Assembly (NCBI GenBank): GCA_002269645.1
Contig: NIVC01000486.1
Span: 390,327 to 454,326, forward strand
DNA from: Macrostomum lignano
Lineage: Eukaryota
Length of the DNA: 64,000 nucleotides
Direction: 5' to 3'
Part shown: positions 3,083 through 49,238 of the stretch, in pieces
Layout: each line of letters starts with the position of its first letter
Position numbering within the stretch: position 1 is the first letter of the stretch
Translations under genes and position numbers: made by a program
Notes under the pieces: model-generated
Seen by the model: only the letters and a program-made list of their open reading frames with translations
What the model was told of the DNA's origin: nothing
Databases searched by the model: none

Positions 3083-4781
3083 CACTAGATGGGTCACTTA
3101 ATACAAATTCGCTCGATGTCTGAATAGCCTACTTTCTTCTGGGCATATGAACGCGCAAGACTATCGATTTTTTGTTCTCCCACGTCAGTGCTATGGTTTA
3201 AGCCATAGACAAAAGTTTCAAGCATCGAAATCAAGCTTACTAGTAGGGGTTCAGCATGGCTTTCCTATTAGATATCAGAGCGAAAGCAAGGAGTATATAT
3301 ATTTTGACTTTTCTCCTTTGCTAGAGCGCAAATTCGTTTTCATTTAAGCAAGTAAAAACAATTGTCTAAATGGCTGCCGGAGGAAGAACGCATGAAGACC
3401 GAGTGCTGGCAAATATCGAAGAGTTGAAATACACAAGCGAAGATTGCTGTGCGGCGACTTGTACCAGCACTAGTACCTCTGTAAACGAAGATGGCATCCC
3501 GATTCGCATGCATCAGTTTCCGAAGAATCAGTCCATAGCATTGAAGTGGCAATCAATGCTGGAGTTACGAGCCATTTCACTCGAGAAGCTGTGGAAAATG
3601 AAGTGGAAGGTATGCAGCTTGCATTTTACAGACGAGGCATACAATTGCCCAAGACTACACCATGACCGAAGTACAAGGCTACGGTGGGATGCTGTTCCTG
3701 ACAGAGAGCTGGTGTTGCCACGACTAATCAGGGAGAAGCCACTAGAAATAATTCGGAGTGACGATGCGGCTGATAATACGTACCCACCCGTTCTGTCGCG
3801 CTTTGACGTCGAAGACGCAGTTCCAGAAGCAGATCAGATTCCTTCAATGGCAGGTGATTTAGCTAGCGCTGCTCCACGAGAACCAACTGCGTCTTGCTCT
3901 GCATCATTTCTACGACTGCATGCATCGTCCAGCAAAGTAGCTAGAAACCTACGACGAAAGCTGTGTCGGCAGGAGAAGACGATCGATAAGCTGCGGCGCA
4001 AAATCGAAGACTCGCAGGTTGGAAAGTTCAGCAGCAGCAGCAGCAGCGCCCTCCACCGTCTAGTGCAGAGCTCTATGAAGCAAACAAAGTCTCGCCACCG
4101 TGGCATGCGTTGGGCTGTCAAAGACATCTGCTCTGCTATTCAAGTGCATCACAAAAGTCCTGCCGCGTACCGACTTCTGCGAGATCAGTGGAAGATGCCA
4201 TTTCCATCAGAGACGTCAATTAAGCGGCGCATCAGATTGTTTTTTCAGGAAGAAGGCGTTTGTGAAGTTACCATGAAGCTGATGAGAAAAAAGTTGCAAG
4301 ACTGCACAGAGAAAGAGCGAGTGGCCACTCTTTGCTTTGATGGAATGAGCTTGTCGGGATAGCTAGCTTAAACTATAAAGTAAAATTTTGTTTTCATAAT
4401 GCTTTTGTCTTGCCCAAATGCTTTATATGTACGAGTATAATATTTACTTTTGTGAAATCTTCTTTCAATCTGTGTATACATGATAAGTTGATACGACCCT
4501 GTGCATCAAAATATATATACATGTAAGTGCAATGCGCATGCCTCTATTATAACAAGTTTAAACCAAGCCCACATTTTTGTTAATTTTTTTTCATTTTCCG
4601 TCGGTAATAAACTTCAATGATTGAAAAATGAGGGTCTGAAATGTCAAAACTTTTTGTCTACATCATAATCTAAATATAGTATTAAAATTTTACTTGGTGC
4701 ACAAAAATATCCAAAAAACTCTATACAGACGCCCAATTGAAAGTAGCTTATTCATGAAATAGGCGAGTGACCCATCTAGTG
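3083..4781 (+). mobile_element. THAP/P-superfamily DNA transposon, internal-deletion derivative
   Basis: TIR CACTAGATGGGTCACT at 3083-3098, exact reverse complement at 4766-4781. Imperfect subterminal inverted match around 3122-3136/4740-4754. Encloses the THAP transposase ORF. No TSD found. Confidence 0.75.
3370..4362 (+). CDS. Truncated THAP-domain P-element-type (THAP9-like) transposase
   Basis: THAP C2CH motif (CCAATC...HQFP...W...VCSLHF), coiled coil, then SPAAYRLLR...PFPSETSIKR...LCFDGM. The ORF stops right after the first catalytic Asp region. Confidence 0.8.
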   Translation: MAAGGRTHEDRVLANIEELKYTSEDCCAATCTSTSTSVNEDGIPIRMHQFPKNQSIALKWQSMLELRAISLEKLWKMKWKVCSLHFTDEAYNCPRLHHDRSTRLRWDAVPDRELVLPRLIREKPLEIIRSDDAADNTYPPVLSRFDVEDAVPEADQIPSMAGDLASAAPREPTASCSASFLRLHASSSKVARNLRRKLCRQEKTIDKLRRKIEDSQVGKFSSSSSSALHRLVQSSMKQTKSRHRGMRWAVKDICSAIQVHHKSPAAYRLLRDQWKMPFPSETSIKRRIRLFFQEEGVCEVTMKLMRKKLQDCTEKERVATLCFDGMSLSG

Positions 4782-12732: not shown

Positions 12733-14014
12733 ATGGCTGCTGAAAAAGTCTGCAACTTCACGGCACTTACAGCCTTTGGCATGAAATTTTGGTGAGTCAC
12801 TCCTTTCAATAGTGAAATTGCTCCGAAGCTTGAAGGTGAAATAGCTCGTCACAAAAATATTCGTGGCAATATACTCGTAAGATTTTACTAACTTTAATAA
12901 ATTACATTAAACCGTTCCTTCCGATCTGAGCATAGTCGCAATCTATAATTTATTGTCGAAAATCCACAGGGGAAGGCTGACTGGAAGCACTACTGACTGG
13001 CAGGTGAGCCAAGCCAACCAACTGAAGCTGCAGAGTCGCTGGCTCGAGGCGGGAGACGCCTTCTGCAAAGCCGCCGAGCTGCACCAAAAAAACGGCGGCC
13101 GCCAGGCCGTTGAGTTGATTGCAGTACGCCTGGGAGATGCCGCGAACTGCTTCAAGAAGGTGGATCCGCGCTATGCAATTCTAGCCATGGAGGCGGTCGC
13201 CTCGCTGCGGGCTCAGCAGAACCAGTTCTCTGAAGCCGCTGAAGTTCACGAAAACATCGCCGACTTGGCAAAGAAGATGGCTATGCAGGACCGGACAGGC
13301 GGAAGCTGGCTGATGCTGGGCGGCCAGCTCGATGAGCAAAGGAGACGAAGGCTCCAAGATCTGCACAGGACCGGCAGTACAACCGAAACTGGAACCCTCA
13401 GCTACGTGAAGTCCTGGATTCCAGGCTGGAGCACACCTTCAACGTCGTCACAGCAAGGATCAGCCAGCCAAGCCTCATCAGCTCATCCACTCCCGATCCC
13501 AGCAGCCGAAGCTCCATCAGTGATTAAGCTGGCTGCTCAACACTACCAGCTGGCGGCAGACGGTTTCAGTGGGGAGAGGCTGACGACAAGGGAGTGCGAG
13601 TGCCTGACGAAGAAGGCGGAGCTGCTGACCGAAATCGGCGAGCTGGGGGCGGCGGCCCAGCAGTTCCTGGAGCTGGCCAGGCAAGCTCAGAGCCACGAAC
13701 TGCTCGCTTTCAGCGCGGTGAGCCACGTCTTCAAGGCCTGCCTTCTGCGGTTGCAGTCAGCCAGCTGTCATCTGGGCGAGACCGAGCCAGCCGAGCGGCT
13801 ACTCGCAGATGCTCAAGCTGCATGCGCCGGCTTCAGCAAATCCGAGGAGGCCGTCTTCGTTCGCGAGCTCGCCGAGGCGGTGCGGGCCCGCGACGTGGCC
13901 GCGCTAGACAACGCCAAGCGGAGGTTCGTGAAGGCCAACAGCGTGGATGACTTCTGCAAGAGCAGGCTGGGCGACTTGCGCAGGGCGCTCAGCGGAGAGG
14001 TGCAGCTCACTTGA
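12733..14014 (+). CDS. Divergent alpha-SNAP (NAPA)-like protein; exons about 12733-12791 and 12970-14014
   Basis: ANQLKLQSRWLEAGDAFCKAAELH, DAANCFKKVDP, AQHYQLAAD, LLAFSAVSHVFKACL and the penultimate Leu align by eye with alpha-SNAP. Phase-2 GT-AG intron 12792-12969 joins in frame. The start codon is uncertain. Confidence 0.8.
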
Positions 14015-33782: not shown

Positions 33783-36700
33783 ATGGCAGCCAACTTTCTC
33801 TCACTGCCCCCACCTGAGCCATTTTCAGTATCAGCAGACCCACACAACGCGGGCAAGCGCTGGAGTCAATGGGCAGACCGCTTTGAAGACTTCATCGATG
33901 CATCAGGCATCACCAACGAGAAGCAAAAGTGCAAACTACTCAGCTACACAGCAGGCAAGGAAATCGCCGACATCATCCGCGAGGAGGCCAAGCCTGCAGC
34001 GGCCACAGAGGACGGCCAAGTCACCCTCAAGCAGACGCTGGAAGCTTTGAAGACATTCTTCAACGGAAGAAAGAACATAGTATTCGCCAGATATCAGTTC
34101 CGCCTATGCACCCAGGCCACCGGGGAGTCCATCGAGTCCTGGTACGCCAGACTGCGCACTGCGGCAGAGCCGAGCGACTTCGAGCAGCTGAAGGACTCGC
34201 TCATCAGAGACCAGCTCGTGGCAACCTGCAGCTCTGACAAGCTGCGCAGGCGGCTGCTTCAGGAGGTGAACATCAGCCTGGAAGAGGCCTTGCGAAAGGC
34301 GAGGGCATTCGAGGCTGCTGAGGAACAAGCCACCGAGATGGAGAAGACAGACTCGCACGTGGCCAGCGTTGCCAAGGGCGACAAGGTGAGAACAAACAGG
34401 TGTGGCCCGGCTCAGACGACCAGCAGGCCCGGCGACCAGCAGCAGCGCACCTGCTACCGCTGCGGCGAGAAAGGCCACGCTACCTGCGACGCTGCCAAGG
34501 GCAAGATCTGCCACAACTGCGGCAAGCCCAACCACCTCGCTCTTGCCTGCCGTCAGCCTCGGCAGTCAAACAGCAGCCGGATCCCACAGCAGCAAATCAG
34601 CACCAATGCTGTATTCACAGCTGCCGACGGCTCCGTCAACGAGGATGTGTTCGCGCTGTACAACCGCGACAAATACCCATCCGACGTCTCACTGACTGTG
34701 CAGGTGGCAAACCGGCAGCTTCCCATGATGATTGACAGCGGAGCCAGCTGCAGCATCATGAGTCTCGGCACCTTCAGAGCGCTCAGCCTGCCAAGCCCAC
34801 GCCCAACAAGAGCCGAAGTTCGCGCCTACGGGGTACCGACACCTCTCAGGATTGTGGGTACCGCCGATCTTGACATCCAAGTGGGATCTGCCAGAACAAC
34901 CGCGACCTTCCACATCATGGACGGCGACGGGCTGACGATACTAGGGCGTCAGCCCGCATTCAAGCTAGGAGTGCTGAAGATCCAGCGACCTGAAGCTACC
35001 AAGCCGCAAAACATAAACGCCATCGCCGACACCACACCCTCCGAGCAGTGTAGCGACCCCCAGCTCAAGGCCATCCTGCAGAGGCACAAAGAAGTCTTCA
35101 ACGGACGAGCTCAAGGCTTTGGAGGAGCAAGGCATCATTGAGGCAGTCAAAGGTCCTAGCGCCTGGGTGTCACGCATGGTGGTGGTGCCCAAGGGCGACG
35201 GTGGCGTTCGAATCTGCCAGGACCTCCGTGATCTCAACGCTTTCGTCATCCCAGAGAAGCAGCAAATCCCCACGCTGGACGAAATCACCGAGGAAATAGC
35301 AGACGCCAAGCTGTTCAGCGAACTCGATATCCGGAAGGCTTTTTATCAGATCCCAGTCCACGAGAGCAGCCGTCACCTCTTCACCTTCAGCACGCCCCTC
35401 GGACTGATGCGGCTCAAGAGGTTCAGCATGGGGTTCACAAATGCCTCGGAAATCCTTCAACGAGTCATGCTTGGCATCCTCAGCGGCATCGACGGCGTCC
35501 GGTGGGCGCACGACGACGTGGTGGTATACGCCTCCGACCTGAAGCAGCACCATGAGAGGCTGGACGCCTGCCTTCAGCGCCTCCGAGAGTTCGGGATCAC
35601 CATCAATCAGGACAAGTGCAGGTTCGCCCGACCGACTGTCGAGTTTCTCGGGATGCGCCTGACCGCCCGGGGCATGCAACCGGCCACCGAGAAAATTGAC
35701 GCCATGCAGAACTTCCGAGAGCCCTCCAACGTGGCCGACGCCCGCTCTTTCCTGGCAAAGTCATCCCAAACTTCGCTGACCTCGCGGCCCCACTCCGGCA
35801 GCTAACGAAGAAGGGCCAGGCCTGGGAGTGGACAGAAAAACACAAAGCGGCGTTCAACGGCATCAAGAAGGCATTCTCAGACGCGGACACGCTGGCCTTT
35901 TTCGACCGCAGGCTGCACACGGAGCTCCTGGTGGACGCATCGCCGATCGGCCTCGGCGCCATCCTCACGCAGCGGCAGCCAGACGGCAACAGCAGACCCG
36001 TCGCCTACGCCAGCAGAGCCCTCTCGCCGGTGGAGCAGCGGTACGCGCAGATCGAGCGGGAGGCGTTGGCCATCAAATTTGGGTGTCTCAAGTTTGAGCA
36101 CTATCTGGCTGGCGACCCAGACTTCACCGTGGTGACGGACCACCGACCGCTCGTGCCGCTTTTCAAGCCTGGCTCCCGTCCGCCACCGCGGATTGAGCGT
36201 ATGGCACTGCGCATTCAGCATCTCCGCTTCAACCTGCTCTACCGGCCAGGCTCGACCAACCTGGCTGACCTGCTGAGTCGGCAGCCACTGCCAGAGCGGC
36301 GTCGGAATGTCGGTGAAGAGCTCGACGCCGCCTTCATCAACGCCGCGTCGACCGGGGCCGTGCCGAAGGGCTTCAGTCTCGACCAGGTTCGGGAAGCATC
36401 GCTCACCGACAGGGACGTCCAGGCGGCGCTGAACGCGATTCGAACCGGCCGCTGGGACATGCGAGCGGCGGCCCAGCGCTCCTTCAAGTCCATCAGCAGC
36501 GAACTGTCGGAAAGCGACGGAGTATTACTCCGCGGTGACCTCATCGTCATCCCCGAGTCGCTGCGCAGGCCGATCCTTCAACTGGCGCACACCGGTCATC
36601 TGAGCGCCGACCGCACCCTTAAACGCCTGCAGACGAAGGTGTGGTGGCCTCGGATGCGCAGCGACTGCGAGCTCTTCGTCCAGTGCTGCACACTGTGCCA

Positions 36701-39700
36701 GGCTGCGGCCACCGGATTGCGACAGACACCATTGAGGCCGACAGATATTCCGGACGGTGCCTGGCTGCTGCTAGGTATGGATTTCTACGGCCCAGTGCAG
36801 GGCCAGATGCTCCTGGTCACCACCGACTTGTATTCAAAATACCCAGAAGTCAATTTTCTCAACTCGACGACGGCGGAGAGCGTGATCCCCCACCTGCGGA
36901 GGCTGTTCGGCAGATACGGCGTCCCGATTGAGGTGGTCACCGACAACGGCCCGCCATTCAGCTCGGCAGCTTTCCGCAGCTAATTCCTCGCTTCGTACGG
37001 CATTCAACACCGCCTCATCTGCCCGCTGCACCCAGAATCCAACGGAGCGACGGAGCGAGTCAACCGCAGCATCGGGAAAGTGATTCAGACGGCAGTGGCC
37101 GAAGGTCGTAACTGGCGGGAGGCTATCGAGGACTGGCTGTTGGCGTTCCGCACGACACCACATCGAGCGACCGGCCGCGCACCCGCTGAGCTACTCATGG
37201 GCAGGACGATGAACGACGGCATCCCGACCATCAAACCATCACAGCTCATCGACGTTAACCATGAAGAGGTGCAGAGCTGGCACAGAAACTATGTCCAAGA
37301 CATGAAGGCGCGCTTCGATGATCGCAAGGGTGTCAAAGAGCACGGCGTCAGAGTCGGCAACAAAGTTCTGCGAAAGAAGCAACCACGTAACAAACTGCAG
37401 CTGCCGTTGGAGCCACATCCTTGGACAGTCAAGCAGGTCCAGGGAGACACGTGTGTCCTGCAACGCGGCGAACAGTCCTGCATGCGCCACGTCTCGCAGC
37501 TGCGGCCCCTGGTCGGAGACCCTGCCGGCCAACCTGCCGGAGAGCCTGCCGGCCAGCCTGCCGGCCAGCCTGCCGGCCAGCCTGCCGGCCAGCCTGCCGG
37601 CCAGCCTGCCGGCCAGCCTGCCGGCCAACCTGCCGGAGAGCCTGCCGGAGAGCCTGCCGGCCAACCTGCAGGAGAGCCTGCCGGCCAGCCTGCCGGAGAG
37701 CCTGCCGGCCAACCTGCCGGCCAGCCTGCCGGAGAGCCTGCCGGCCAGCCTGCCGGCCAACCTGCCGGAGAGCCTGCCGGCCAACCTGCAGGAGAGCCTG
37801 CCGGCCAGCCTGCCGGAGAGCCTGCCGGCCAGCCTGCCGGCCAGCCTGCCGGCCAGCCTGCCGGCCAGCCTGCCGGCCAGCCTGCCGGCCAACCTGCCGG
37901 AGAGCCTGCCGGCCAACCTGCCGGCCAGCCTGCCGGCCAACCTGCAGGAGAGCCTGCCGGCCAGCCTGCCGGCCAACCTGCCGGAGAGCCTGCCGGCCAG
38001 CCTGCCGGAGAGCCTGCCGGCCAGCCTGCCGGCCAACCTGCCGGAGAGCCTGCCGGCCAACCTGCAGGAGAGCCTGCCGGCCAGCCTGCCGGCCAACCTG
38101 CAGGAGAGCCTGCCGGCCAGCCTGCAGGAGAGCCTGCCGGCCAGCCTGCCGGCCAACCTGCCGGAGAGCCTGCCGGCCAGCCTGCCGGCCAGCCTGCCGG
38201 AGAGCCTGCCGGCCAACCTGCCGGCCAACCTGCCGGAGAGCCTGCCGGCCAACCTGCAGGAGAGCCTGCCGGCCAGCCTGCCGGCCAACCTGCCGGAGAG
38301 CCTGCCGGCCAACCTGCAGGAGAGCCTGCCGGCCAACCTGCCGGCCAGCCTGCCGGCCAACCTGCAGGAGAGCCTGCCGGCCAGCCTGCCGGAGAGCCTG
38401 CCGGCCAACCTGCAGGAGAGCCTGCCGGCCAGCCTGCCGGCCAACCTGCAGGAGAGCCTGCCGGCCAGCCTGCCGGAGAGCCTGCCGGCCAACCTGCCGG
38501 CCAGCCTGCCGGAGAGCCTGCCGGCCAACCTGCCGGCCAACCTGCCGGAGAGCCTGCCGGCCAACCTGCAGGAGAGCCTGCCGGCCAGCCTGCCGGAGAG
38601 CCTGCCGGCCAGCCTGCCGGCCAGCCTGCCGGAGAGCCTGCCGGCCAGCCTGCCGGCCAGCCTGCCGGCCAGCCTGCCGGCCAGCCTGCCGGCCAGCCTG
38701 CCGGCCAACCTGCCGGAGAGCCTGCCGGCCAACCTGCCGGCCAGCCTGCCGGCCAACCTGCAGGAGAGCCTGCCGGCCAGCCTGCCGGCCAACCTGCCGG
38801 AGAGCCTGCCGGCCAGCCTGCCGGAGAGCCTGCCGGCCAGCCTGCCGGCCAACCTGCCGGAGAGCCTGCCGGCCAACCTGCAGGAGAGCCTGCCGGCCAG
38901 CCTGCCGGCCAACCTGCAGGAGAGCCTGCCGGCCAGCCTGCAGGAGAGCCTGCCGGCCAGCCTGCCGGCCAACCTGCCGGAGAGCCTGCCGGCCAGCCTG
39001 CCGGCCAGCCTGCCGGAGAGCCTGCCGGCCAACCTGCCGGCCAACCTGCCGGAGAGCCTGCCGGCCAACCTGCAGGAGAGCCTGCCGGCCAGCCTGCCGG
39101 CCAACCTGCCGGAGAGCCTGCCGGCCAACCTGCAGGAGAGCCTGCCGGCCAACCTGCCGGCCAGCCTGCCGGCCAACCTGCAGGAGAGCCTGCCGGCCAG
39201 CCTGCCGGAGAGCCTGCCGGCCAACCTGCAGGAGAGCCTGCCGGCCAGCCTGCCGGCCAACCTGCAGGAGAGCCTGCCGGCCAGCCTGCCGGAGAGCCTG
39301 CCGGCCAACCTGCCGGCCAGCCTGCCGGAGAGCCTGCCGGCCAACCTGCCGGCCAACCTGCCGGAGAGCCTGCCGGCCAACCTGCAGGAGAGCCTGCCGG
39401 CCAGCCTGCCGGAGAGCCTGCCGGCCAGCCTGCCGGCCAACCTGCCGGAGAGCCTGCCGGCCAACCTGCCGGCCAGCCTGCCGGAGAGCCTGCCGGCCAA
39501 CCTGCAGGAGAGCCTGCCGGCCAGCCTGCCGGCCAACCTGCCGGAGAGCCTGCCGGCCAACCTGCCGGAGAGCCTGCCGGCCAACCTGCCGGCCAGCCTG
39601 CCGGCCAACCTGCAGGAGAGCCTGCCGGCCAGCCTGCCGGCCAACCTGCCGGAGAGCCTGCCGGCCAACCTGCCGGAGAGCCTGCCGGCCAGCCTGCCGG

Positions 39701-40532
39701 CCAACCTGCCGGAGAGCCTGCCGGCCAACCTGCAGGAGAGCCTGCCGGCCAGCCTGCCGGCCAACCTGCAGGAGAGCCTGCCGGCCAGCCTGCCGGCCAA
39801 CCTGCCGGAGAGCCTGCCGGCCAGCCTGCCGGAGAGCCTGCCGGCCAACCTGCCGGCCAACATGCCGGAGAGCCTGCCGGCCAACCTGCAGGAGAGCCTG
39901 CCGGCCAACCTGCCGGAGAGCCTGCCGGCCAACCTGCAGGAGAGCCTGCCGGCCAACCTGCCGGCCAGCCTGCCGGCCAACCTGCAGGAGAGCCTGCCGG
40001 CCAGCCTGCCGGCCAACCTGCCGGAGAGCCTGCCGGCCAGCCTGCCGGCCAACCTGCCGGAGAGCCTGCCGGCCAACCTGCAGGAGAGCCTGCCGGCCAA
40101 ACTGCCGGCCAGCCTGCCGGCCAACCTGCAGGAGAGCCTGCCGGCCAGCCTGCCGGCCAACCTGCAGGAGAGCCTGCCGGCCAGCCTGCCGGCCAACCTG
40201 CAGGAGAGCCTGCCGGCCAGCCTGCCGGCCAGCCTGCCGGCCAACCTGCCGGAGAGCCTGCCGGCCAGCCTGCCGGAGAGCCTGCCGGCCAGCCTGCCGG
40301 CCAGCCTGCCGGCCAACCTGCCGGAGAGCCTGCCGGCCAACCTGCCGGAGAGCCTGCCGGCCAACCTGCAGGAGAGCCTGCCGGCCAACCTGCCGGAGAG
40401 CCTGCCGGCCAACCTGCAGGAGAGCCTGCCGGCCAACCTACCGGTCAGCCCGCCGGTCTACCCAGCGGTAGCATCGCCACGCGAGAACACCAAAGAGCTG
40501 CCCGTAACAGAGTGCTCAGCTACAAATTGTGA
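33783..40532 (+). pseudogene. Gypsy gag-pro-RT-RH-IN polyprotein, disrupted
   Basis: Two CCHC-type knuckles, protease IDSGA, RT ELDIRKAF...FGFTNAS-like SMGFTNAS...AHDD, RH VDASPIGLGA/EREALA/TDHRPL, IN H-H-C-C plus MDFYG, TDNG, TER. Deletion frameshifts near 35108 and 35757; in-frame TAA at 36981-36983. Confidence 0.95.
37521..40460 (+). repeat. 12-bp minisatellite CCTGC(C/A)GG(CCA[A/G]/AGAG), about 245 units, in frame with the integrase C-terminus (PAGQ/PAGE)
   Basis: Read directly. The pol frame stays open through the array to the stop at 40532. Confidence 0.97.
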
Positions 40533-41285: not shown

Positions 41286-42174
41286 TAGGAGAATTGAACA
41301 AACAAAAAAAATACCACCTGCAGGAAATTTCCGAGTTCGAATCTGCGTCACTCGGCAAGGATAATTCCGTGAGCTAATTAGCTGATCAAAGGCAGTTGCC
41401 AGCAGGCGATGAGCAAGTCAATTATTTAAGACAGCGACGACTCAATAAAAAATTCTTCTGAACAACCGAAAAATGCGAATATTGCAGGCATCTCCTGGGA
41501 GCAGATTAATCTGGAGGCGTGTGCCGAACAGATAACAGGGCCAACCCTAATTAGCAATTTATTGGATTGACAGTGGCGGCTCGCTCACGGCAGCTCAAAA
41601 TTATGACAAAAATTTTAATGAAATTTTAATGACTGACAAGTCGCCACGGGATCGCTGGGCGTTGCGTGTCGCTTCATTTTCCTTTGGGCCTGATCGCCAT
41701 TTTAATCTGGTCGATCTGCTGACGCAAAGCGAGCAGCAGGTCGTCGCGGGGGTGCCGGTCTCGCCCCATGGCTGTAGGTTGCAGATATCCGGAATTGTCG
41801 CCGTGGGACCTCCGCGCTCAGGCAACCCACCGCCCCTGGGGCCCGGCGCCAGGGACCTCGTGAAAGCTTGAAATTTGGAAACGAAACTCGAGCAGGGATT
41901 GACGGGGGTTTTTTGGCATGCAAAAATGCTTAATACCCGAAAAATGGTAACTTATTACCTCAGCAATGGTTACAAGTAGCCCCTCCCTGACCCACGCTGT
42001 CCCGCTGTAGCATATAAATCAAGCACTGTCATCGGTGACTCATTTGAGCGTGAATGAATTTAAAAAAGAATGGAAATGCCACACAATTGCAGTCACTTCA
42101 TCAGGGGCGTCGCCAGGATCATTGAAGGAGCCTTTTTTCACAGGCGTTTTTTAACTTGGCAATTTTTTTATCGC

Positions 42175-43550
42175 ACTGGGCGCCACCTTTTATTTGACTG
42201 GGCGCCACTTTTTTATTTGACTGGGCGCCACACTTTTATTTGACTGGGCGCCACACTTTTAGTTGACTGGGCGCCATTAGAGCTGACTGGGCGCCATTAG
42301 AGCTGCCTGACCGCCATTAGAGATGACTGGGCGCCAGTATAGCTGCCTGGGCGCCAGTATAGCTGACTGGGCGCCATTAGAGCTGCCTGGGCGCATTAGA
42401 GCTGCCTGGGCGACAGTATAGCTGCCTGGGCGCCAGTATAGCTGACTGGGCGCCAGTATAGCTGACTGGGCGCCATTAGAGCTGCCTGGGCGCCAGTATA
42501 GCTGCCTGGGCGCCAGTATAGCTGACTGGGCGCCAGTATAGCTGACTGGGCGCCAGTATAGCTGCCTGGGCGCCAGTATAGCTTCCTGGGCGACAGTATA
42601 GCTTACTGGGCGCATTAGAGCTGACTAGGCGCCATTAGAGCTGCCTGGCCGCCATTAGAGCTGACTGGGCGCCATTAGAGCTGCCTGGCCGCCATTAGAG
42701 CTGACTGGGCGCCATTAGAGCTGCCTGGCCGCCATTAGAGCTGACTGGGCGCCATTAGAGCTGCCTGGGCGCCATTAGAGTTGACTGGGCGCCAGTATAG
42801 CTGCCTGGGCGCCAGTATAGCTGACTGGGCGCCATTAGAGCTGCCTGGGCGCCATTAGAGCTGCCTGGGCGCCAGTATAGCTGCCTGGGCGCCAGTATAG
42901 CTGCCTGGGCGCCAGTATAGCTGACTGGGCGCCAGTATAGCTGACTGGGCGCCAGTATAGCTTCCTGGGCGCCAGTATAGCTGACTGGGCGCGTTAGAGC
43001 TGACTAGGCGCCATTAGAGCTGCCTGGCCGCCATTAGAGCTGCCTGGCCGCCATTAGAGCTGCCTGGCCGCCATTAGAGCTGCCTGGGCGCCATTAGAGC
43101 TGCCTGGGCGCCAGTATAGCTGCCTGGGCGCCAGTATAGCTGCCTGGGCGCCAGTATAGCTGCCTGGGCGCCAGTATAGCTGCCTGGGCGCCAGTATAGC
43201 TTCCTGGGCGCCAGTATAGCTGACTGGGCGCATTAGAGCTGACTAGGCGCCATTAGAGCTGCCTGGCCGCCATTAGAGCTGCCTGGCCGCCATTAGAGCT
43301 GACTGGGCGCCATTAGAGCTGCCTGGGCGCCATTAGAGCTGACTGGGCGCCATTAGAGCTGCCTGGGCGCCAGTATAGCTGCCTGGGCGCCAGTATAGCT
43401 GACTGGGCGCCATTAGAGCTGCCTGGGCGCATTAGAGCTGCCTGGGCGCCATTAGAGCTGCCTGGGCGCCAGTATAGCTGCCTGGGCGCCAGTATAGCTG
43501 ACTGGGCGCCATTAGAGCTGCCTGGGCGCATTAGAGCTGCCTGGGCGCCA
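42175..43550. repeat. 20-bp minisatellite CTGGGCGCCA(GTAT/TTAG)AGCTG(C/A)
   Basis: About 68 units of two interleaved variants. Confidence 0.97.
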
Positions 43551-44139
43551 TTGTTTAGCTTCGTCTCGAGGCGCGAGGTGACCGCGTGGAGTGCGAGAGG
43601 GCCTGTAAGAGGCTCCCCAAGTGTATTCCTCAATACAGCTGTTCCTATCGAGTTAGCAACAATAGCTATGTTTTGCATCATCACTGACGGTAGTGTTGAG
43701 TCTGATCATTTCTTGCTTTTTCTATGCTCGGTTTCTGCAAACTGCGGTATTTTGAATTAAATTAACAAGTCTCACCTGCATATAAGTGAGGGCAAGCAAG
43801 GGGGCATTGCCATTGACTCTGTGGAAGGGTGCTGTTTAGCAACTAAAACCATGGTTTTTTAAGTAAAATTTTTCACGTATTTATATGCTCTACGAGATTT
43901 TGGATAACCAGTTTAGCCACTAAATAATGAGAATACGATGCACAGGTAACATTGAGGAAAGTAGGAAAAATAAGACTTTCTGCTGATCATTGTTACATTT
44001 GGAGGTTAAACCAGGTGGAAGGGACAACCAGTTTAATGGAGGGAGGCAATTACCAGATAGGGGGGCAAACCACTTGGGGATAAACCAGTTGGGGGGACAC
44101 TAGTTGGGGGGGAATCTGTTGGGGGGAATCAGTTGGGGG

Positions 44140-44310
44140 ACAGGTGGAGGGCAAACAAGGTGCAGGTGGGGACAAAGCAGGTGGGGGACAAAGCAGGTGG
44201 GGACAAAGCAGGTGGGTGACAAAGCAGGTGGGTGACAAAGCAGGTGGGGACAAAGCAGGTGGGGACAAAGCAGGTGGGGGACAAAGCAGGTGGGGACAAA
44301 GCAGGTGGAG
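44140..44310. repeat. 15-17-bp repeat GGGGACAAAGCAGGT
   Basis: About 10 units just upstream of the neuropeptide promoter. Confidence 0.9.
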
Positions 44311-44337
44311 ACAAAACTTCGCAGCGAGGCCAGGTGG

Positions 44338-44480
44338 CCAATAGCAGCGAACGGTTTGGCGGCTTTCTACAAAAGAGCAGAAAAGCCAGCCCGAACTGGT
44401 GGAAGCCAATCAAATTCGCCGTCCAGATGCGCAGCCTCAGGGGTCCGTGGCTCGGGCACGGGCGGAGCGGTCTGTATAAA
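44338..44480 (+). promoter_or_regulatory. Candidate core promoter of the neuropeptide gene
   Basis: CCAAT boxes near 44338 and 44405; TATAAA at 44475-44480, about 110 nt before the ATG. Confidence 0.55.
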
Positions 44481-44588
44481 TGCACCCAACGCTGGCAGGC
44501 AGTTCGGTCGCGTCCCAGCTATCGAAGTCTCCCGCACAGCTCCGATCAGCAATCAAATCCAGTCAAATCAACTCAGAGCTCAACAACA

Positions 44589-45318
44589 ATGCGCGTCGGA
44601 GTCATCGGTCTCGTCCTCTGCGCCGTGCTGGTGCTGATGCAGTGCGCCTTCGCCCAGCAGTTCCACTTTAGCCACGGTAACTGCAGTTCATATAATGGCC
44701 GTTTGTTACATTAAACTTGCTACAAACTTGCTATCTACAATGAATTGCTACCATTTCAGGAGTTAACGGTAAAACTTCTCAGTAAATTACCTCTACATTA
44801 CTTGTACCAATGTACATACCGGTATACCGATTATTATTTGCTTTGGCAACAAATCACTCGCTTGTATAGTTTGGTTAAGCATGGCAATATTCGCCTCTGT
44901 GCTTTATAACTAACAATCACTAATTCGATTGAGTACATAGCCTACTCAAGTTAGGTGCGACAACTACTTGTACTTAAACGTAACGTCGCAGGTTGGAAGC
45001 CCGGCAAGCGCGGCCTGGCCGAGGAGGGCCACGCTGGCCATCAGATCTTCCGGCTGAAGAAAGGCTACCACTTCTTCCGCCTGAAGAAGGACCAGGAGTG
45101 CGCCATCGGCGAGGAGGCCCGGGCGCTGCTGGCCGATATTGTGGTCAGTTTTTTGCTTCCGTTTAAAAACGCGCATCAATACCAGCAAACCACTCTACTA
45201 TAAGTAGAAAAATACGAATATTTGTATTTTTTCTCCGTTTGTACAGAAATCTACCCAGAGCGGCTCGCTGTGCCCGGCAGACAGGCAGGTGATTGCCGCG
45301 TTCGTGCAGAACCTCTGA
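44589..45318 (+). CDS. GnRH/corazonin-type neuropeptide precursor, 103 aa; exons 44589-44676, 44992-45143, 45247-45318
   Basis: Spliced: MRVGVIGLVLCAVLVLMQCAFA | QQFHFSHGWKPG KR | GLAEEGHAGHQIFRL KK | GYHFFRL KK | DQECAIG...SLCPADRQVIAAFVQNL. Signal peptide, dibasic sites, GT-AG introns of phase 1 and 0, AATAAA at 45422. Confidence 0.9.
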
Positions 45319-45421
45319 GAACGGCATCGGGACAGCTGATGGCAGCCGGATGACTTGTCAGCATCGGCAACAGCAAAACAACTGCACACTTTTTATTGTC
45401 TTAACTGTGACTGATATATGG

Positions 45422-45427
45422 AATAAA
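45422..45427 (+). terminator. Polyadenylation signal AATAAA
   Basis: Canonical hexamer about 100 nt after the stop codon. Confidence 0.65.
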
Positions 45428-45510
45428 CAAATATACGAGGCATGCTTGTGAAGATGGAATGATTGAATATTCGCCATCGTTACAGCAATTTGACCTCATC
45501 TAACAGTGTT

Positions 45511-49238
<3,728 letters not shown>

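What the first reader, a model, noticed from the sequence alone, without database searches (positions are those of the whole stretch)
44589..45318. Single precursor joining a GnRH/corazonin-type peptide with GHQIFRL and GYHFFRL peptides
Seen only after splicing: the intron splits the peptide at the Gly codon, so no ORF in the track shows it. The predicted product is pQQFHFSHGWKP-amide directly after the signal peptide, then two KK-flanked FRL peptides and a two-Cys tail. Established: molluscan GnRH/corazonin-like peptides are pQNYHFSNGWxxG-type and follow the signal peptide. From memory (unverified), planarian and schistosome precursors encode YHFFRL and HIGHQIFRL peptides. Inference: this gene links the flatworm-specific FRL peptides to the GnRH/AKH/corazonin superfamily and may show the ancestral arrangement; it is a candidate reproductive regulator.
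Basis: partly seen in the sequence, partly recalled or inferred. Interest (0 to 1): 0.8.

Follow-up and report, generated by a model that had tools for sequence, protein, structure and literature searches.

The report
Macrostomum GnRH-like/FRL neuropeptide precursor gene
This is the Macrostomum lignano copy of a flatworm neuropeptide gene (planarian grh-1), already known to encode a GnRH/corazonin-like peptide together with "FRL" peptides; the only fresh point is a hidden 9-base micro-exon that probably lengthens the hormone-like peptide by three residues.

Summary
The three-exon model is real. Exons 44589-44676, 44992-45143 and 45247-45318 have GT..AG introns and GC3 of 87% against about 35% GC in the introns. 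They encode signal peptide, QQFHFSHGWKPGKR, GLAEEGHAGHQIFRL-KK, GYHFFRL-KK and a two-Cys tail.

The window is Macrostomum lignano, gene Mlig008027 copy g6, annotated in GenBank only as "hypothetical protein".

The combined GnRH-like plus FRL precursor is not new. Schmidtea mediterranea grh-1 (Collins et al. 2010) has the same layout, and those authors grouped it with spp-18 and spp-19 as an "FRL-containing" family. Polyclad "GnRH-2" entries in GenBank share the layout too. An exhaustive profile search found relatives only in flatworms. The three-exon structure, with intron phases 1 and 0, is conserved across the family.

Three of the four transcript-derived GenBank models include it, giving QQFHFSHGVNGWKPGKR. 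The predicted 11-residue peptide is therefore at best one isoform, and probably the minor one.

A polyclad homologue carries a different insertion at exactly the same site.

Verdict: a new member of a known kind, of modest interest. Any reproductive role is untested.

The parts
44475..44480 (+). TATAAA box, about 110 nt upstream of the ATG
   Evidence: Read directly from the sequence. The 5' end of the g6 transcript model (P0004) lies about 35 nt downstream. Function as a promoter element is inferred.
44589..44676 (+). Coding exon 1. It encodes the 22-aa signal peptide (44589-44654, ...CAFA|Q), then QQFHFSH and the first base of a Gly codon.
   Evidence: The donor is CACG|GTAACT. The cleavage site was assigned by the -3/-1 rule (A-F-A|Q), by inspection; SignalP was not run.
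44760..44768 (+). 9-nt micro-exon GAGTTAACG. With the flanking split codons it adds Gly-Val-Asn, i.e. a net VNG: ...SHG-VNG-WKP.
   Evidence: The signals are tttcag|GAGTTAACG|gtaaaa. It is present in the GenBank models P0001, P0002 and P0003. It is identical, with flanks, in the diverged paralogue L003. Only 140 of 5000 shuffled introns contain an equally good in-frame candidate.
44992..45143 (+). Coding exon 2. It encodes (G)WKP-GKR (44992-45011), GLAEEGHAGHQIFRL (45012-45056), KK, GYHFFRL (45063-45083), KK, and the first half of the tail with Cys 1.
   Evidence: The acceptor is gtcgcag|GT and the donor is GTG|GTCAGT. It aligns with Smed-grh-1 and polyclad GnRH-2.
45247..45318 (+). Coding exon 3. 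It encodes KSTQSGSLCPADRQVIAAFVQNL and the stop codon, and holds the second conserved Cys and the C-x-x-D motif.
   Evidence: The preceding intron is phase 0 and sits at the same place in Mlig013730, Mlig024884 and Sma-npp-28.
45422..45427 (+). AATAAA polyadenylation signal, about 105 nt after the stop codon
   Evidence: Read directly from the sequence. Function is inferred.

Best explanation
Window 44475-45427 (+) is one of several near-identical copies (Mlig008027 g6) of the Macrostomum lignano orthologue of planarian grh-1 and polyclad 'GnRH-2'. It is a small neuropeptide preprohormone gene.

Inferred processing, by analogy with planarian prohormones whose FRL peptides were confirmed by mass spectrometry:
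- Signal peptidase cuts after Ala22.
- A prohormone convertase cuts at GKR, KK and KK.
- The N-terminal Gln cyclises to pGlu, and the Gly before KR donates a C-terminal amide.

Predicted products:
1. A GnRH/corazonin-type peptide. It is pQQFHFSHGVNGWKP-NH2 when the 9-nt micro-exon is included (probably the main mRNA), and the canonical-length pQQFHFSHGWKP-NH2 when it is skipped.
2. Non-amidated GLAEEGHAGHQIFRL.
3. Non-amidated GYHFFRL, identical to the planarian peptide seen by mass spectrometry.
4. A 41-residue C-terminal peptide with two conserved Cys.

The combined GnRH-like plus FRL layout is the conserved state of this flatworm family. spp-19, spp-18, npp-28 and the two other M. lignano genes are relatives that keep the gene structure but lack the GnRH-like peptide, and some also lack the first FRL peptide.

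Shown here: gene structure, orthology and family-wide intron conservation. Inferred: processing, secretion, and receptor type (presumably a corazonin/GnRH-type GPCR).
For: - The spliced ORF has canonical splice sites and a strong exon/intron composition contrast.
- It is identical or near-identical to the GenBank M. lignano proteins PAA82237.1, PAA68647.1, PAA46590.1 and PAA94807.1.
- Window 41514-48119 is 100% identical to NIVC01000486.1, the g6 locus.
- BLASTP gives 1e-21 against Smed-grh-1 and 5e-23 against S. pusilla GnRH-2, both over nearly full length.
- Profile searches give E = 1e-35 to 1e-47.
- Smed-grh-1 reads SP-QSYHFSNDWLPGKR-YHTGHQMFRL-KK-GFHYFRL-KK-2Cys tail.
- Collins et al. Table S4 puts grh-1, spp-18 and spp-19 in one 'FRL-containing' family. 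GYHFFRL and KHIGHQIFRL were confirmed by mass spectrometry. The mass computed here, 938.48, matches their value.
- Three coding exons with phase-1 and phase-0 introns at equivalent positions are found in the window gene, Mlig013730, Mlig024884 and S. mansoni npp-28.
- Micro-exon: three of four transcript-derived models include VNG, although loci g2, g4 and g6 are 100%, 99.9% and 100% identical in DNA. Paralogue g1 carries the same 9 nt fused to the end of exon 1. Such a sequence can only arise from spliced RNA. The assembly was polished with RNA-seq.
Against: - No RNA-seq reads or cDNA could be inspected here, so the relative use of the micro-exon is unknown.
- The models rest on an annotation pipeline (StringTie/TACO plus BLAT-mapped de novo transcripts), which can both miss and mis-place 9-nt exons.
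- No peptidomic data exist for M. lignano.
- The GnRH-like peptide of Smed-grh-1 was itself only predicted, not seen by mass spectrometry.
- No homologue outside flatworms was recovered at the precursor level. Assignment to the GnRH/corazonin superfamily therefore rests on an 11-residue motif and its position in the precursor.
- This particular copy has a LINE inserted about 190 bp after the stop codon, and it may be expressed differently from the other copies.
Confidence: 0.85

Rival explanations
1. The first reader's three-exon transcript (E1 joined directly to E2) is the only or main mRNA. On this view the 9-nt micro-exon in the GenBank models is an annotation or assembly artefact.
For: - The model annotated at this exact locus (PAA82237.1, P0004) uses the direct join.
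- The resulting 11-mer aligns without gaps to planarian QSYHFSNDWLP and polyclad QNMHFSNGWQP.
- The 9 nt fused to exon 1 in paralogue g1 may be a polishing artefact.
Against: - A polishing artefact of that kind itself requires RNA reads that carry exon 1 followed by GAGTTAACG.
- Two complete models (g1, g2) and one frameshifted model (g4) include VNG. The only model without it is partial at both ends.
- BLAT cannot place a 9-nt block, so a micro-exon transcript mapped with BLAT would yield exactly such a 'skipped' model (inference).
- The micro-exon has a strong acceptor (tttcag|G) and donor (G|gtaaaa), while the exon 2 acceptor has a poor pyrimidine tract.
Confidence: 0.15
2. Both forms are made. 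The micro-exon is a regulated alternative exon, so the gene delivers two different GnRH/corazonin-like ligands (an 11-mer and a 14-mer) with the same FRL peptides.
For: - Both joins occur among models derived from identical DNA.
- Both forms are frame-preserving. They keep pQQFHFS at the N-terminus and GWKP-amide at the C-terminus, and the insert (V-N-G) is made of turn-forming residues placed at the central Gly.
- N. humilis GnRH-2 has an unrelated 8-residue net insertion at exactly this position, relative to S. pusilla GnRH-2. Its first and last inserted residues (E, S) fit a phase-1 G|..|GY intron.
Against: - The skipped form is supported only by one fragmentary model.
- No read-level, tissue-level or stage-level data are available.
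- No polyclad genomic sequence was available to show that there is an intron at that position.
Confidence: 0.4
3. The N-terminal peptide only resembles GnRH/corazonin by chance or convergence. The gene would then be simply an FRL-peptide precursor whose N-terminal propeptide is inert.
For: - No precursor-level homology outside flatworms was found.
- Paralogues (spp-19, spp-18, npp-28, Mlig013730, Mlig024884) function without this peptide.
- The main isoform may disrupt the canonical spacing.
Against: - The block Q-x-x-H-F-S-x-x-W-x-P-G-K-R, sitting directly after the signal peptide, is invariant across three flatworm orders.
- It matches the molluscan pQNYHFSNGW-type motif (established knowledge; the peptide string occurs in the reviews listed).
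- Polyclads are reported to have GnRH-type and corazonin-type receptors, with their two GnRH/corazonin peptides tested as ligands (PMC13551398; the authors' unpublished data).
Confidence: 0.08

Closest known systems
[quoted passage not shown] 2010
   Same: - The order of parts is the same: signal peptide, pQ-x-[YF]-HFS-x-x-W-x-P-GKR, x-GHQ[IM]FRL, KK, G[YF]H[FY]FRL, KK, two-Cys tail.
- It is 40% identical over 97 residues (BLASTP 1e-21).
- Its authors already grouped it with the FRL genes.
   Different: - The planarian peptide has Asp where Macrostomum has Gly8.
- No VNG-type insertion is reported in the cloned cDNA.
- The planarian spacer before GHQMFRL is 5 residues shorter.
- The planarian gene structure could not be checked.
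Polyclad 'gonadotropin-releasing hormone-2' (Stylochoplana pusilla BCO16381.1; Notocomplana humilis)
   Same: - The architecture is the same (QNMHFSNGWQPGKR ... THDFFRV-RR-VYHFFRL-RK-2Cys tail). BLASTP gives 5e-23.
- The N. humilis form has an insertion at the same N-G-W position as the Macrostomum micro-exon.
   Different: - The first FRL-type peptide is FFRV.
- The cleavage sites are RR and RK.
- The N. humilis insertion is 8 residues net and unrelated in sequence to VNG.
FRL-only relatives: Smed-spp-19, Smed-spp-18, Schistosoma and other trematode npp-28, M. lignano Mlig013730 and Mlig024884
   Same: - They share the GYHFFRL/AYHFFRL core flanked by dibasic sites and the two-Cys tail.
- They share three coding exons with phase-1 and phase-0 introns.
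- GYHFFRL is identical to the planarian peptide confirmed by mass spectrometry.
   Different: - They lack the GnRH/corazonin-like peptide.
- spp-18 and npp-28 also lack the HQIFRL peptide.
Lophotrochozoan invertebrate GnRH/corazonin-type peptides (mollusc/annelid pQNYHFSNGWxx-amide type)
   Same: - The micro-exon-skipped isoform has the same length (11-12 residues).
- It shares the pGlu start directly after the signal peptide, the HFS-x-GW core, the Pro-amide end and the GKR processing site.
   Different: - No FRL peptides are known in those precursors (from memory; not tested here).
- No precursor-level similarity was detectable.
- The micro-exon form has a 3-residue longer centre.
- Receptor pairing is untested.

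Membership tests
Flatworm grh-1 / 'FRL-containing' prohormone family (Collins et al. 2010) | A non-amidated [GA]-[YF]-H-[FY]-F-R-L heptapeptide flanked by dibasic cleavage sites | tested here: met
   KK-GYHFFRL-KK is encoded at 45057-45089. It is identical to the planarian GYHFFRL confirmed by mass spectrometry.
Flatworm grh-1 / 'FRL-containing' prohormone family (Collins et al. 2010) | An upstream x-GHQ[IM]FRL peptide (grh-1 and spp-19 subtypes) | tested here: met
   GLAEEGHAGHQIFRL-KK is encoded at 45012-45062. It aligns with YHTGHQMFRL of grh-1 and KHIGHQIFRL of spp-19.
Flatworm grh-1 / 'FRL-containing' prohormone family (Collins et al. 2010) | A C-terminal tail with two conserved Cys and a C-x-x-D motif | tested here: met
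   Columns C66, C89 and D92 are invariant across 8 sequences.
Flatworm grh-1 / 'FRL-containing' prohormone family (Collins et al. 2010) | Significant full-length sequence similarity to named members | tested here: met
   BLASTP gives 1e-21 against grh-1 and 5e-23 against S. pusilla GnRH-2. Profile E-values are 1e-35 to 1e-47. All 16 hits of the exhaustive search are flatworm proteins.
Flatworm grh-1 / 'FRL-containing' prohormone family (Collins et al. 2010) | A shared gene structure: three main coding exons, with intron 1 in phase 1 after the signal/N-terminal region and intron 2 in phase 0 before the second Cys | tested here: met
   Exact spliced mapping was done for the window gene, Mlig013730, Mlig024884 and Sma-npp-28. 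Smed-grh-1 and the polyclads could not be tested, because no genomic DNA was available.
Flatworm grh-1 / 'FRL-containing' prohormone family (Collins et al. 2010) | Expression in neurons and processing into the predicted peptides | not testable with these tools
   This needs in situ hybridisation and LC-MS/MS. The [M+H]+ values to look for are 1380.660 (11-mer), 1650.792 (14-mer), 939.484 (GYHFFRL) and 1634.840 (GLAEEGHAGHQIFRL).
GnRH/AKH/corazonin superfamily (lophotrochozoan invGnRH/corazonin type) | The peptide starts with Gln (which becomes pGlu) immediately after the signal peptide, and ends with Gly plus a dibasic site (amidation) | tested here: met
   The sequence reads ...CAFA|QQFHF...KPGKR. 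The cleavage site was assigned by the -3/-1 rule, by inspection; SignalP was not available.
GnRH/AKH/corazonin superfamily (lophotrochozoan invGnRH/corazonin type) | The core motif pQ-x-[YF]-H-F-S-x-G-W-x-P with canonical spacing (11-12 residues) | tested here: inconclusive
   The motif is met by the micro-exon-skipped isoform (QQFHFSHGWKP). In the isoform carried by three of four annotated models, the centre is lengthened to ...SHGVNGWKP.
GnRH/AKH/corazonin superfamily (lophotrochozoan invGnRH/corazonin type) | Precursor-level homology to mollusc or annelid GnRH/corazonin precursors | tested here: not met
   The exhaustive HMM search of 1.84 billion representatives returned only flatworm proteins, and so did the word-indexed profile search. 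The shared region is too short to score, so this weakens proof of membership but not the resemblance.
GnRH/AKH/corazonin superfamily (lophotrochozoan invGnRH/corazonin type) | The peptide activates a GnRH-, corazonin- or AKH-type GPCR of the same species | not testable with these tools
   This needs receptor cloning and a cell-based assay. A review reports such receptors and ligand tests in polyclads, but only as unpublished data (PMC13551398).

The most novel reading that the evidence does not exclude
The 9-nt micro-exon is a genuinely regulated alternative exon lying inside the mature hormone sequence. One gene would then release either a canonical 11-residue or an extended 14-residue GnRH/corazonin-like amide, always together with the same FRL peptides. 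The phase-1 intron in the central Gly codon would be an old flatworm feature, used repeatedly for such insertions; the polyclad Notocomplana GnRH-2 carries an unrelated insertion at the same spot. Splicing-based tuning of ligand shape within a GnRH/corazonin-family peptide has not, to my knowledge, been described.
Probability: 0.3. Interest if true: 0.6.

Novelty: new member of a known kind. Interest (0 to 1): 0.3.

Why it matters
- It adds the earliest-branching rhabditophoran lineage (Macrostomorpha) to planarians and polyclads as carriers of the combined GnRH/corazonin-like plus FRL precursor. This strengthens the view that this layout is ancestral in flatworms, and that the FRL-only genes of planarians and parasites (spp-18, spp-19, npp-28) are reduced relatives.
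- M. lignano has stable transgenesis and RNAi (PMC5730564, PMC8717057, PMC7053086; RNAi in PMC4490696). A correctly annotated gene model, including the micro-exon, is therefore practically useful for reporter lines, knock-down and peptide synthesis.
- A peptide synthesised from the naive three-exon model could be the wrong, or a minor, ligand.
- If the micro-exon is alternatively used, it would be a compact example of splicing that changes a hormone's core.

Tried and rejected
1. I asked whether the VNG difference among GenBank models reflects different gene copies. Rejected: loci g2, g4 and g6 are 100%, 99.9% and 100% identical to the window over 44400-45460, and all keep the intronic micro-exon.
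2. I looked for transcript contigs by exact-protein look-up of the two full-length isoforms. The protein cluster holds only the four NCBI models, so no independent transcript-derived proteins are available.
3. I tried to fetch genomic DNA for Smed-grh-1 to compare intron position. It is not on record. The polyclad entries have no contigs.
4. I searched for relatives outside flatworms with a word-indexed profile and an exhaustive HMM search. None was found. P0018 and P0019 (E > 1) share only an FRLKKGYHF-like stretch and were treated as chance matches.
5. Literature searches for the exact peptide strings (FHFSHGW, QFHFSHG, SHGVNGW) gave no paper. A search for micro-exon plus corazonin gave nothing relevant. 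A search for npp-28, spp-18 and spp-19 gave no later paper discussing the GnRH link.
6. I considered that the 9 nt fused to exon 1 in paralogue g1 is a true genomic change, such as cDNA-mediated conversion. This cannot be excluded. However, the assembly was Pilon-polished with STAR-mapped RNA-seq, and g1 is the only copy to which reads map uniquely, so an artefact is the simpler reading.
7. A tandem acceptor (cagGAG|) could give a 6-nt version of the micro-exon. No model supports it.

Full report
**1. The observation**

Reading 44200-45700 and splicing by script confirms the model.
- Exon 1 is 44589-44676, exon 2 is 44992-45143, and exon 3 is 45247-45318.
- The introns are 315 nt and 103 nt, both GT..AG.
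- The CDS is 312 nt and encodes a 103-aa product: MRVGVIGLVLCAVLVLMQCAFA | QQFHFSHGWKPGKR | GLAEEGHAGHQIFRL | KK | GYHFFRL | KK | DQECAIGEEARALLADIVKSTQSGSLCPADRQVIAAFVQNL.
- Exons are 64% GC (GC3 87%), against 34-37% in the introns.
- A TATAAA box (44475-44480) and an AATAAA signal (45422-45427) bracket the gene.

This is a real gene, not a chance ORF.

**2. Identity**

The product hits one protein cluster, four Macrostomum lignano 'hypothetical proteins' of gene Mlig008027: copies g1, g2, g4 and g6.
- Window 41514-48119 is 100% identical to NIVC01000486.1, the g6 copy.
- Copies g2 and g4 are 100% and 99.9% identical over the gene.
- Copy g1 is a paralogue about 90-95% identical.

**3.

Three of the four GenBank proteins read ...QQFHFSHGVNGWKPGKR.... 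The extra residues come from a 9-nt micro-exon inside intron 1, at 44760-44768: accatttcag|GAGTTAACG|gtaaaac. The codons then read CAC G|GA GTT AAC G|GT TGG.

Only P0004 lacks it. P0004 is the model annotated at this very locus; it is partial at both ends and stops at ...GEEA.

The DNA of g2, g4 and g6 is identical here, so the difference lies in transcripts or annotation, not in the genome.

How the models were made (PMC5730564):
- They come from StringTie/TACO on STAR alignments, plus de novo transcripts mapped with BLAT.
- BLAT cannot place a 9-nt block. A micro-exon transcript would then be rendered as a frame-preserving 'skip' (my inference).

Paralogue g1 carries the same nine bases fused directly to the end of exon 1 (...CACG GAGTTAACG GTAACTGC). 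It also still keeps the intronic copy.
- That junction sequence exists only in spliced RNA.
- The assembly was Pilon-polished with RNA-seq, and g1 is the only copy to which reads map uniquely.
- This is most simply a polishing artefact, and so an indirect trace of abundant micro-exon-containing mRNA. A real cDNA-mediated conversion is not excluded.

Signal quality:
- The micro-exon has better splice signals than the exon 2 acceptor, whose pyrimidine tract is poor.
- Only 2.8% of shuffled introns offer an equally good in-frame candidate.

I conclude that the micro-exon form is real and probably predominant (about 0.75).

**4. The family**

GYHFFRL (spp-18, spp-19) and KHIGHQIFRL/HQIFRL (spp-19) were seen by mass spectrometry, and schistosome npp-28 encodes AYHFFRL.

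[quoted passage not shown]. This is exactly the arrangement of the window gene. Table S4 of that paper already lists grh-1, spp-18 and spp-19 as one 'FRL-containing' family.

Search results:
- BLASTP of the window product gives 1e-21 against grh-1 (40% identity) and 5e-23 against 'gonadotropin-releasing hormone-2' of the polyclad Stylochoplana pusilla.
- An exhaustive HMM search of 1.84 billion representatives found 16 significant proteins, all from flatworms.
- These include polyclad GnRH-2 and trematode npp-28 orthologues.
- They also include two further M. lignano genes: Mlig013730 (...GHSGHQIFRL KK GYHFFRL KK...) and Mlig024884. Both lack the GnRH-like peptide.

It is not a new link.

**5. 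Gene structure**

Exact spliced mapping shows that all four genes tested have three main coding exons:

| Gene | Exon lengths (nt) |
|---|---|
| Window gene | 88 / 152 / 72 |
| Mlig013730 | 79 / 167 / 78 |
| Mlig024884 | 64 / 149 / 78 |
| S. mansoni npp-28 | 82 / 116 / 48 |

- Intron 1 is in phase 1, just after the signal/N-terminal region.
- Intron 2 is in phase 0, shortly before the second Cys.

The intron that splits the GnRH-like peptide is therefore a family-wide, old intron.

**6. A parallel in a polyclad**

Notocomplana humilis GnRH-2 reads QNMHFSN-EPEVSAQSS-WQPGKR, where S. pusilla has QNMHFSN-G-WQPGKR.
- The insertion replaces the Gly at exactly the position of the Macrostomum intron and micro-exon.
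- Its first residue (E, codon GAR) and last residue (S, codon AGY) are what a 24-nt insert in a phase-1 G|GY codon requires.
- This is suggestive only, because no polyclad genomic DNA was available.

**7. Mechanism (inferred)**

- Signal peptidase cuts after A-F-A.
- A convertase cuts at GKR, KK and KK.
- The N-terminal Gln forms pGlu, and the C-terminal Gly directs amidation.

Predicted products:
- pQQFHFSHGVNGWKP-NH2 ([M+H]+ 1650.79) and/or pQQFHFSHGWKP-NH2 (1380.66).
- GLAEEGHAGHQIFRL (1634.84).
- GYHFFRL (939.48).
- A 41-aa two-Cys peptide.

Both forms of the first peptide keep the N-terminal pQQFHFS and the C-terminal GWKP-amide. The insert V-N-G consists of turn-forming residues at the central Gly, so a hairpin-type ligand might tolerate it; this is speculation.

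Receptor type and physiological role are untested. In the main text of Collins et al., grh-1 appears only in the gene-name table and among genes with restricted CNS expression. A 2026 review mentions polyclad GnRH-type and corazonin-type receptors, and ligand tests, only as unpublished data.

**8. Novelty and score**

No paper in the searchable library contains the M. lignano peptide strings, and the GenBank entries are unnamed. The gene is therefore a new member of a known kind.

What remains of interest is the micro-exon inside the hormone sequence and its possible polyclad counterpart. Interest is 0.3.

**9. Context**

The gene lies in minisatellite-rich DNA. A LINE, with a 12-bp target-site duplication, is inserted about 190 bp after its stop codon. 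This insertion is absent from copies g2 and g4.

Noticed in passing
window 45511-49202 (minus strand; ORF 45600-49067): A full-length LINE with one 1155-aa ORF (endonuclease, reverse transcriptase, RNase H). It is flanked by a 12-bp target-site duplication, TCTAACAGTGTT. It is absent from the otherwise identical g2 and g4 copies (L001, L004), so it is a recent, copy-specific insertion about 190 bp downstream of the neuropeptide gene's stop codon.
   Followed up: partly
L003 3194-3202 (NIVC01000001.1, paralogue g1), equivalent to window 44676/44677: The nine micro-exon bases GAGTTAACG are fused to the end of exon 1, while the intronic micro-exon copy is retained. This is likely an artefact of polishing the assembly with RNA-seq reads, though possibly a real cDNA-mediated change. 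It may be a general hazard at micro-exons in the Mlig_3_7 assembly.
   Followed up: partly
L004, equivalent to window 45120: A single-base deletion in a C run (GGCCCGGG to GGCCGGG) in copy g4. It explains the frameshifted C-terminus of PAA46590.1 (...GEEAGRCWPIL) and is probably a long-read homopolymer error.
   Followed up: yes
window 44162-44315 and 42267-43552: The region directly upstream of the promoter is minisatellite: a 15-nt unit GCAGGTGGGGACAAA (10 copies) and a 20-nt unit (65 copies). Copy number differs between gene copies (multiple staggered BLAST hits against L001). This is relevant when choosing a promoter fragment for reporter constructs.
   Followed up: no
window 33783-40456: LTR-retroelement gag/protease and RNaseH/integrase ORFs (33783-36983) are followed by a 2.9-kb array of a 24-nt unit, CCTGCCGGCCAG x2, at 76% GC. 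The array creates long spurious ORFs in several frames.
   Followed up: partly
window 12953-14014 (+) and 3370-4362 (+): An ORF with a SNAP (soluble NSF attachment protein) domain (E = 4e-32) and an ORF with a THAP domain (E = 3e-12). These are probably exons of a host gene and a domesticated or transposon-derived gene, respectively.
   Followed up: no
L005/L006 (Mlig013730) and L007/L008 (Mlig024884): M. lignano has two more FRL-family prohormone genes without the GnRH-like peptide. UniProt automatic names for them ('BofC_C domain-containing', 'CBP domain-containing', 'Venom peptide') look wrong.
   Followed up: partly
window 44757-44768: The micro-exon acceptor is a tandem cagGAG| site. Use of the second AG would give a 6-nt exon and the peptide ...FSH-VNG-WKP (13 residues). 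No annotated model supports it.
   Followed up: no
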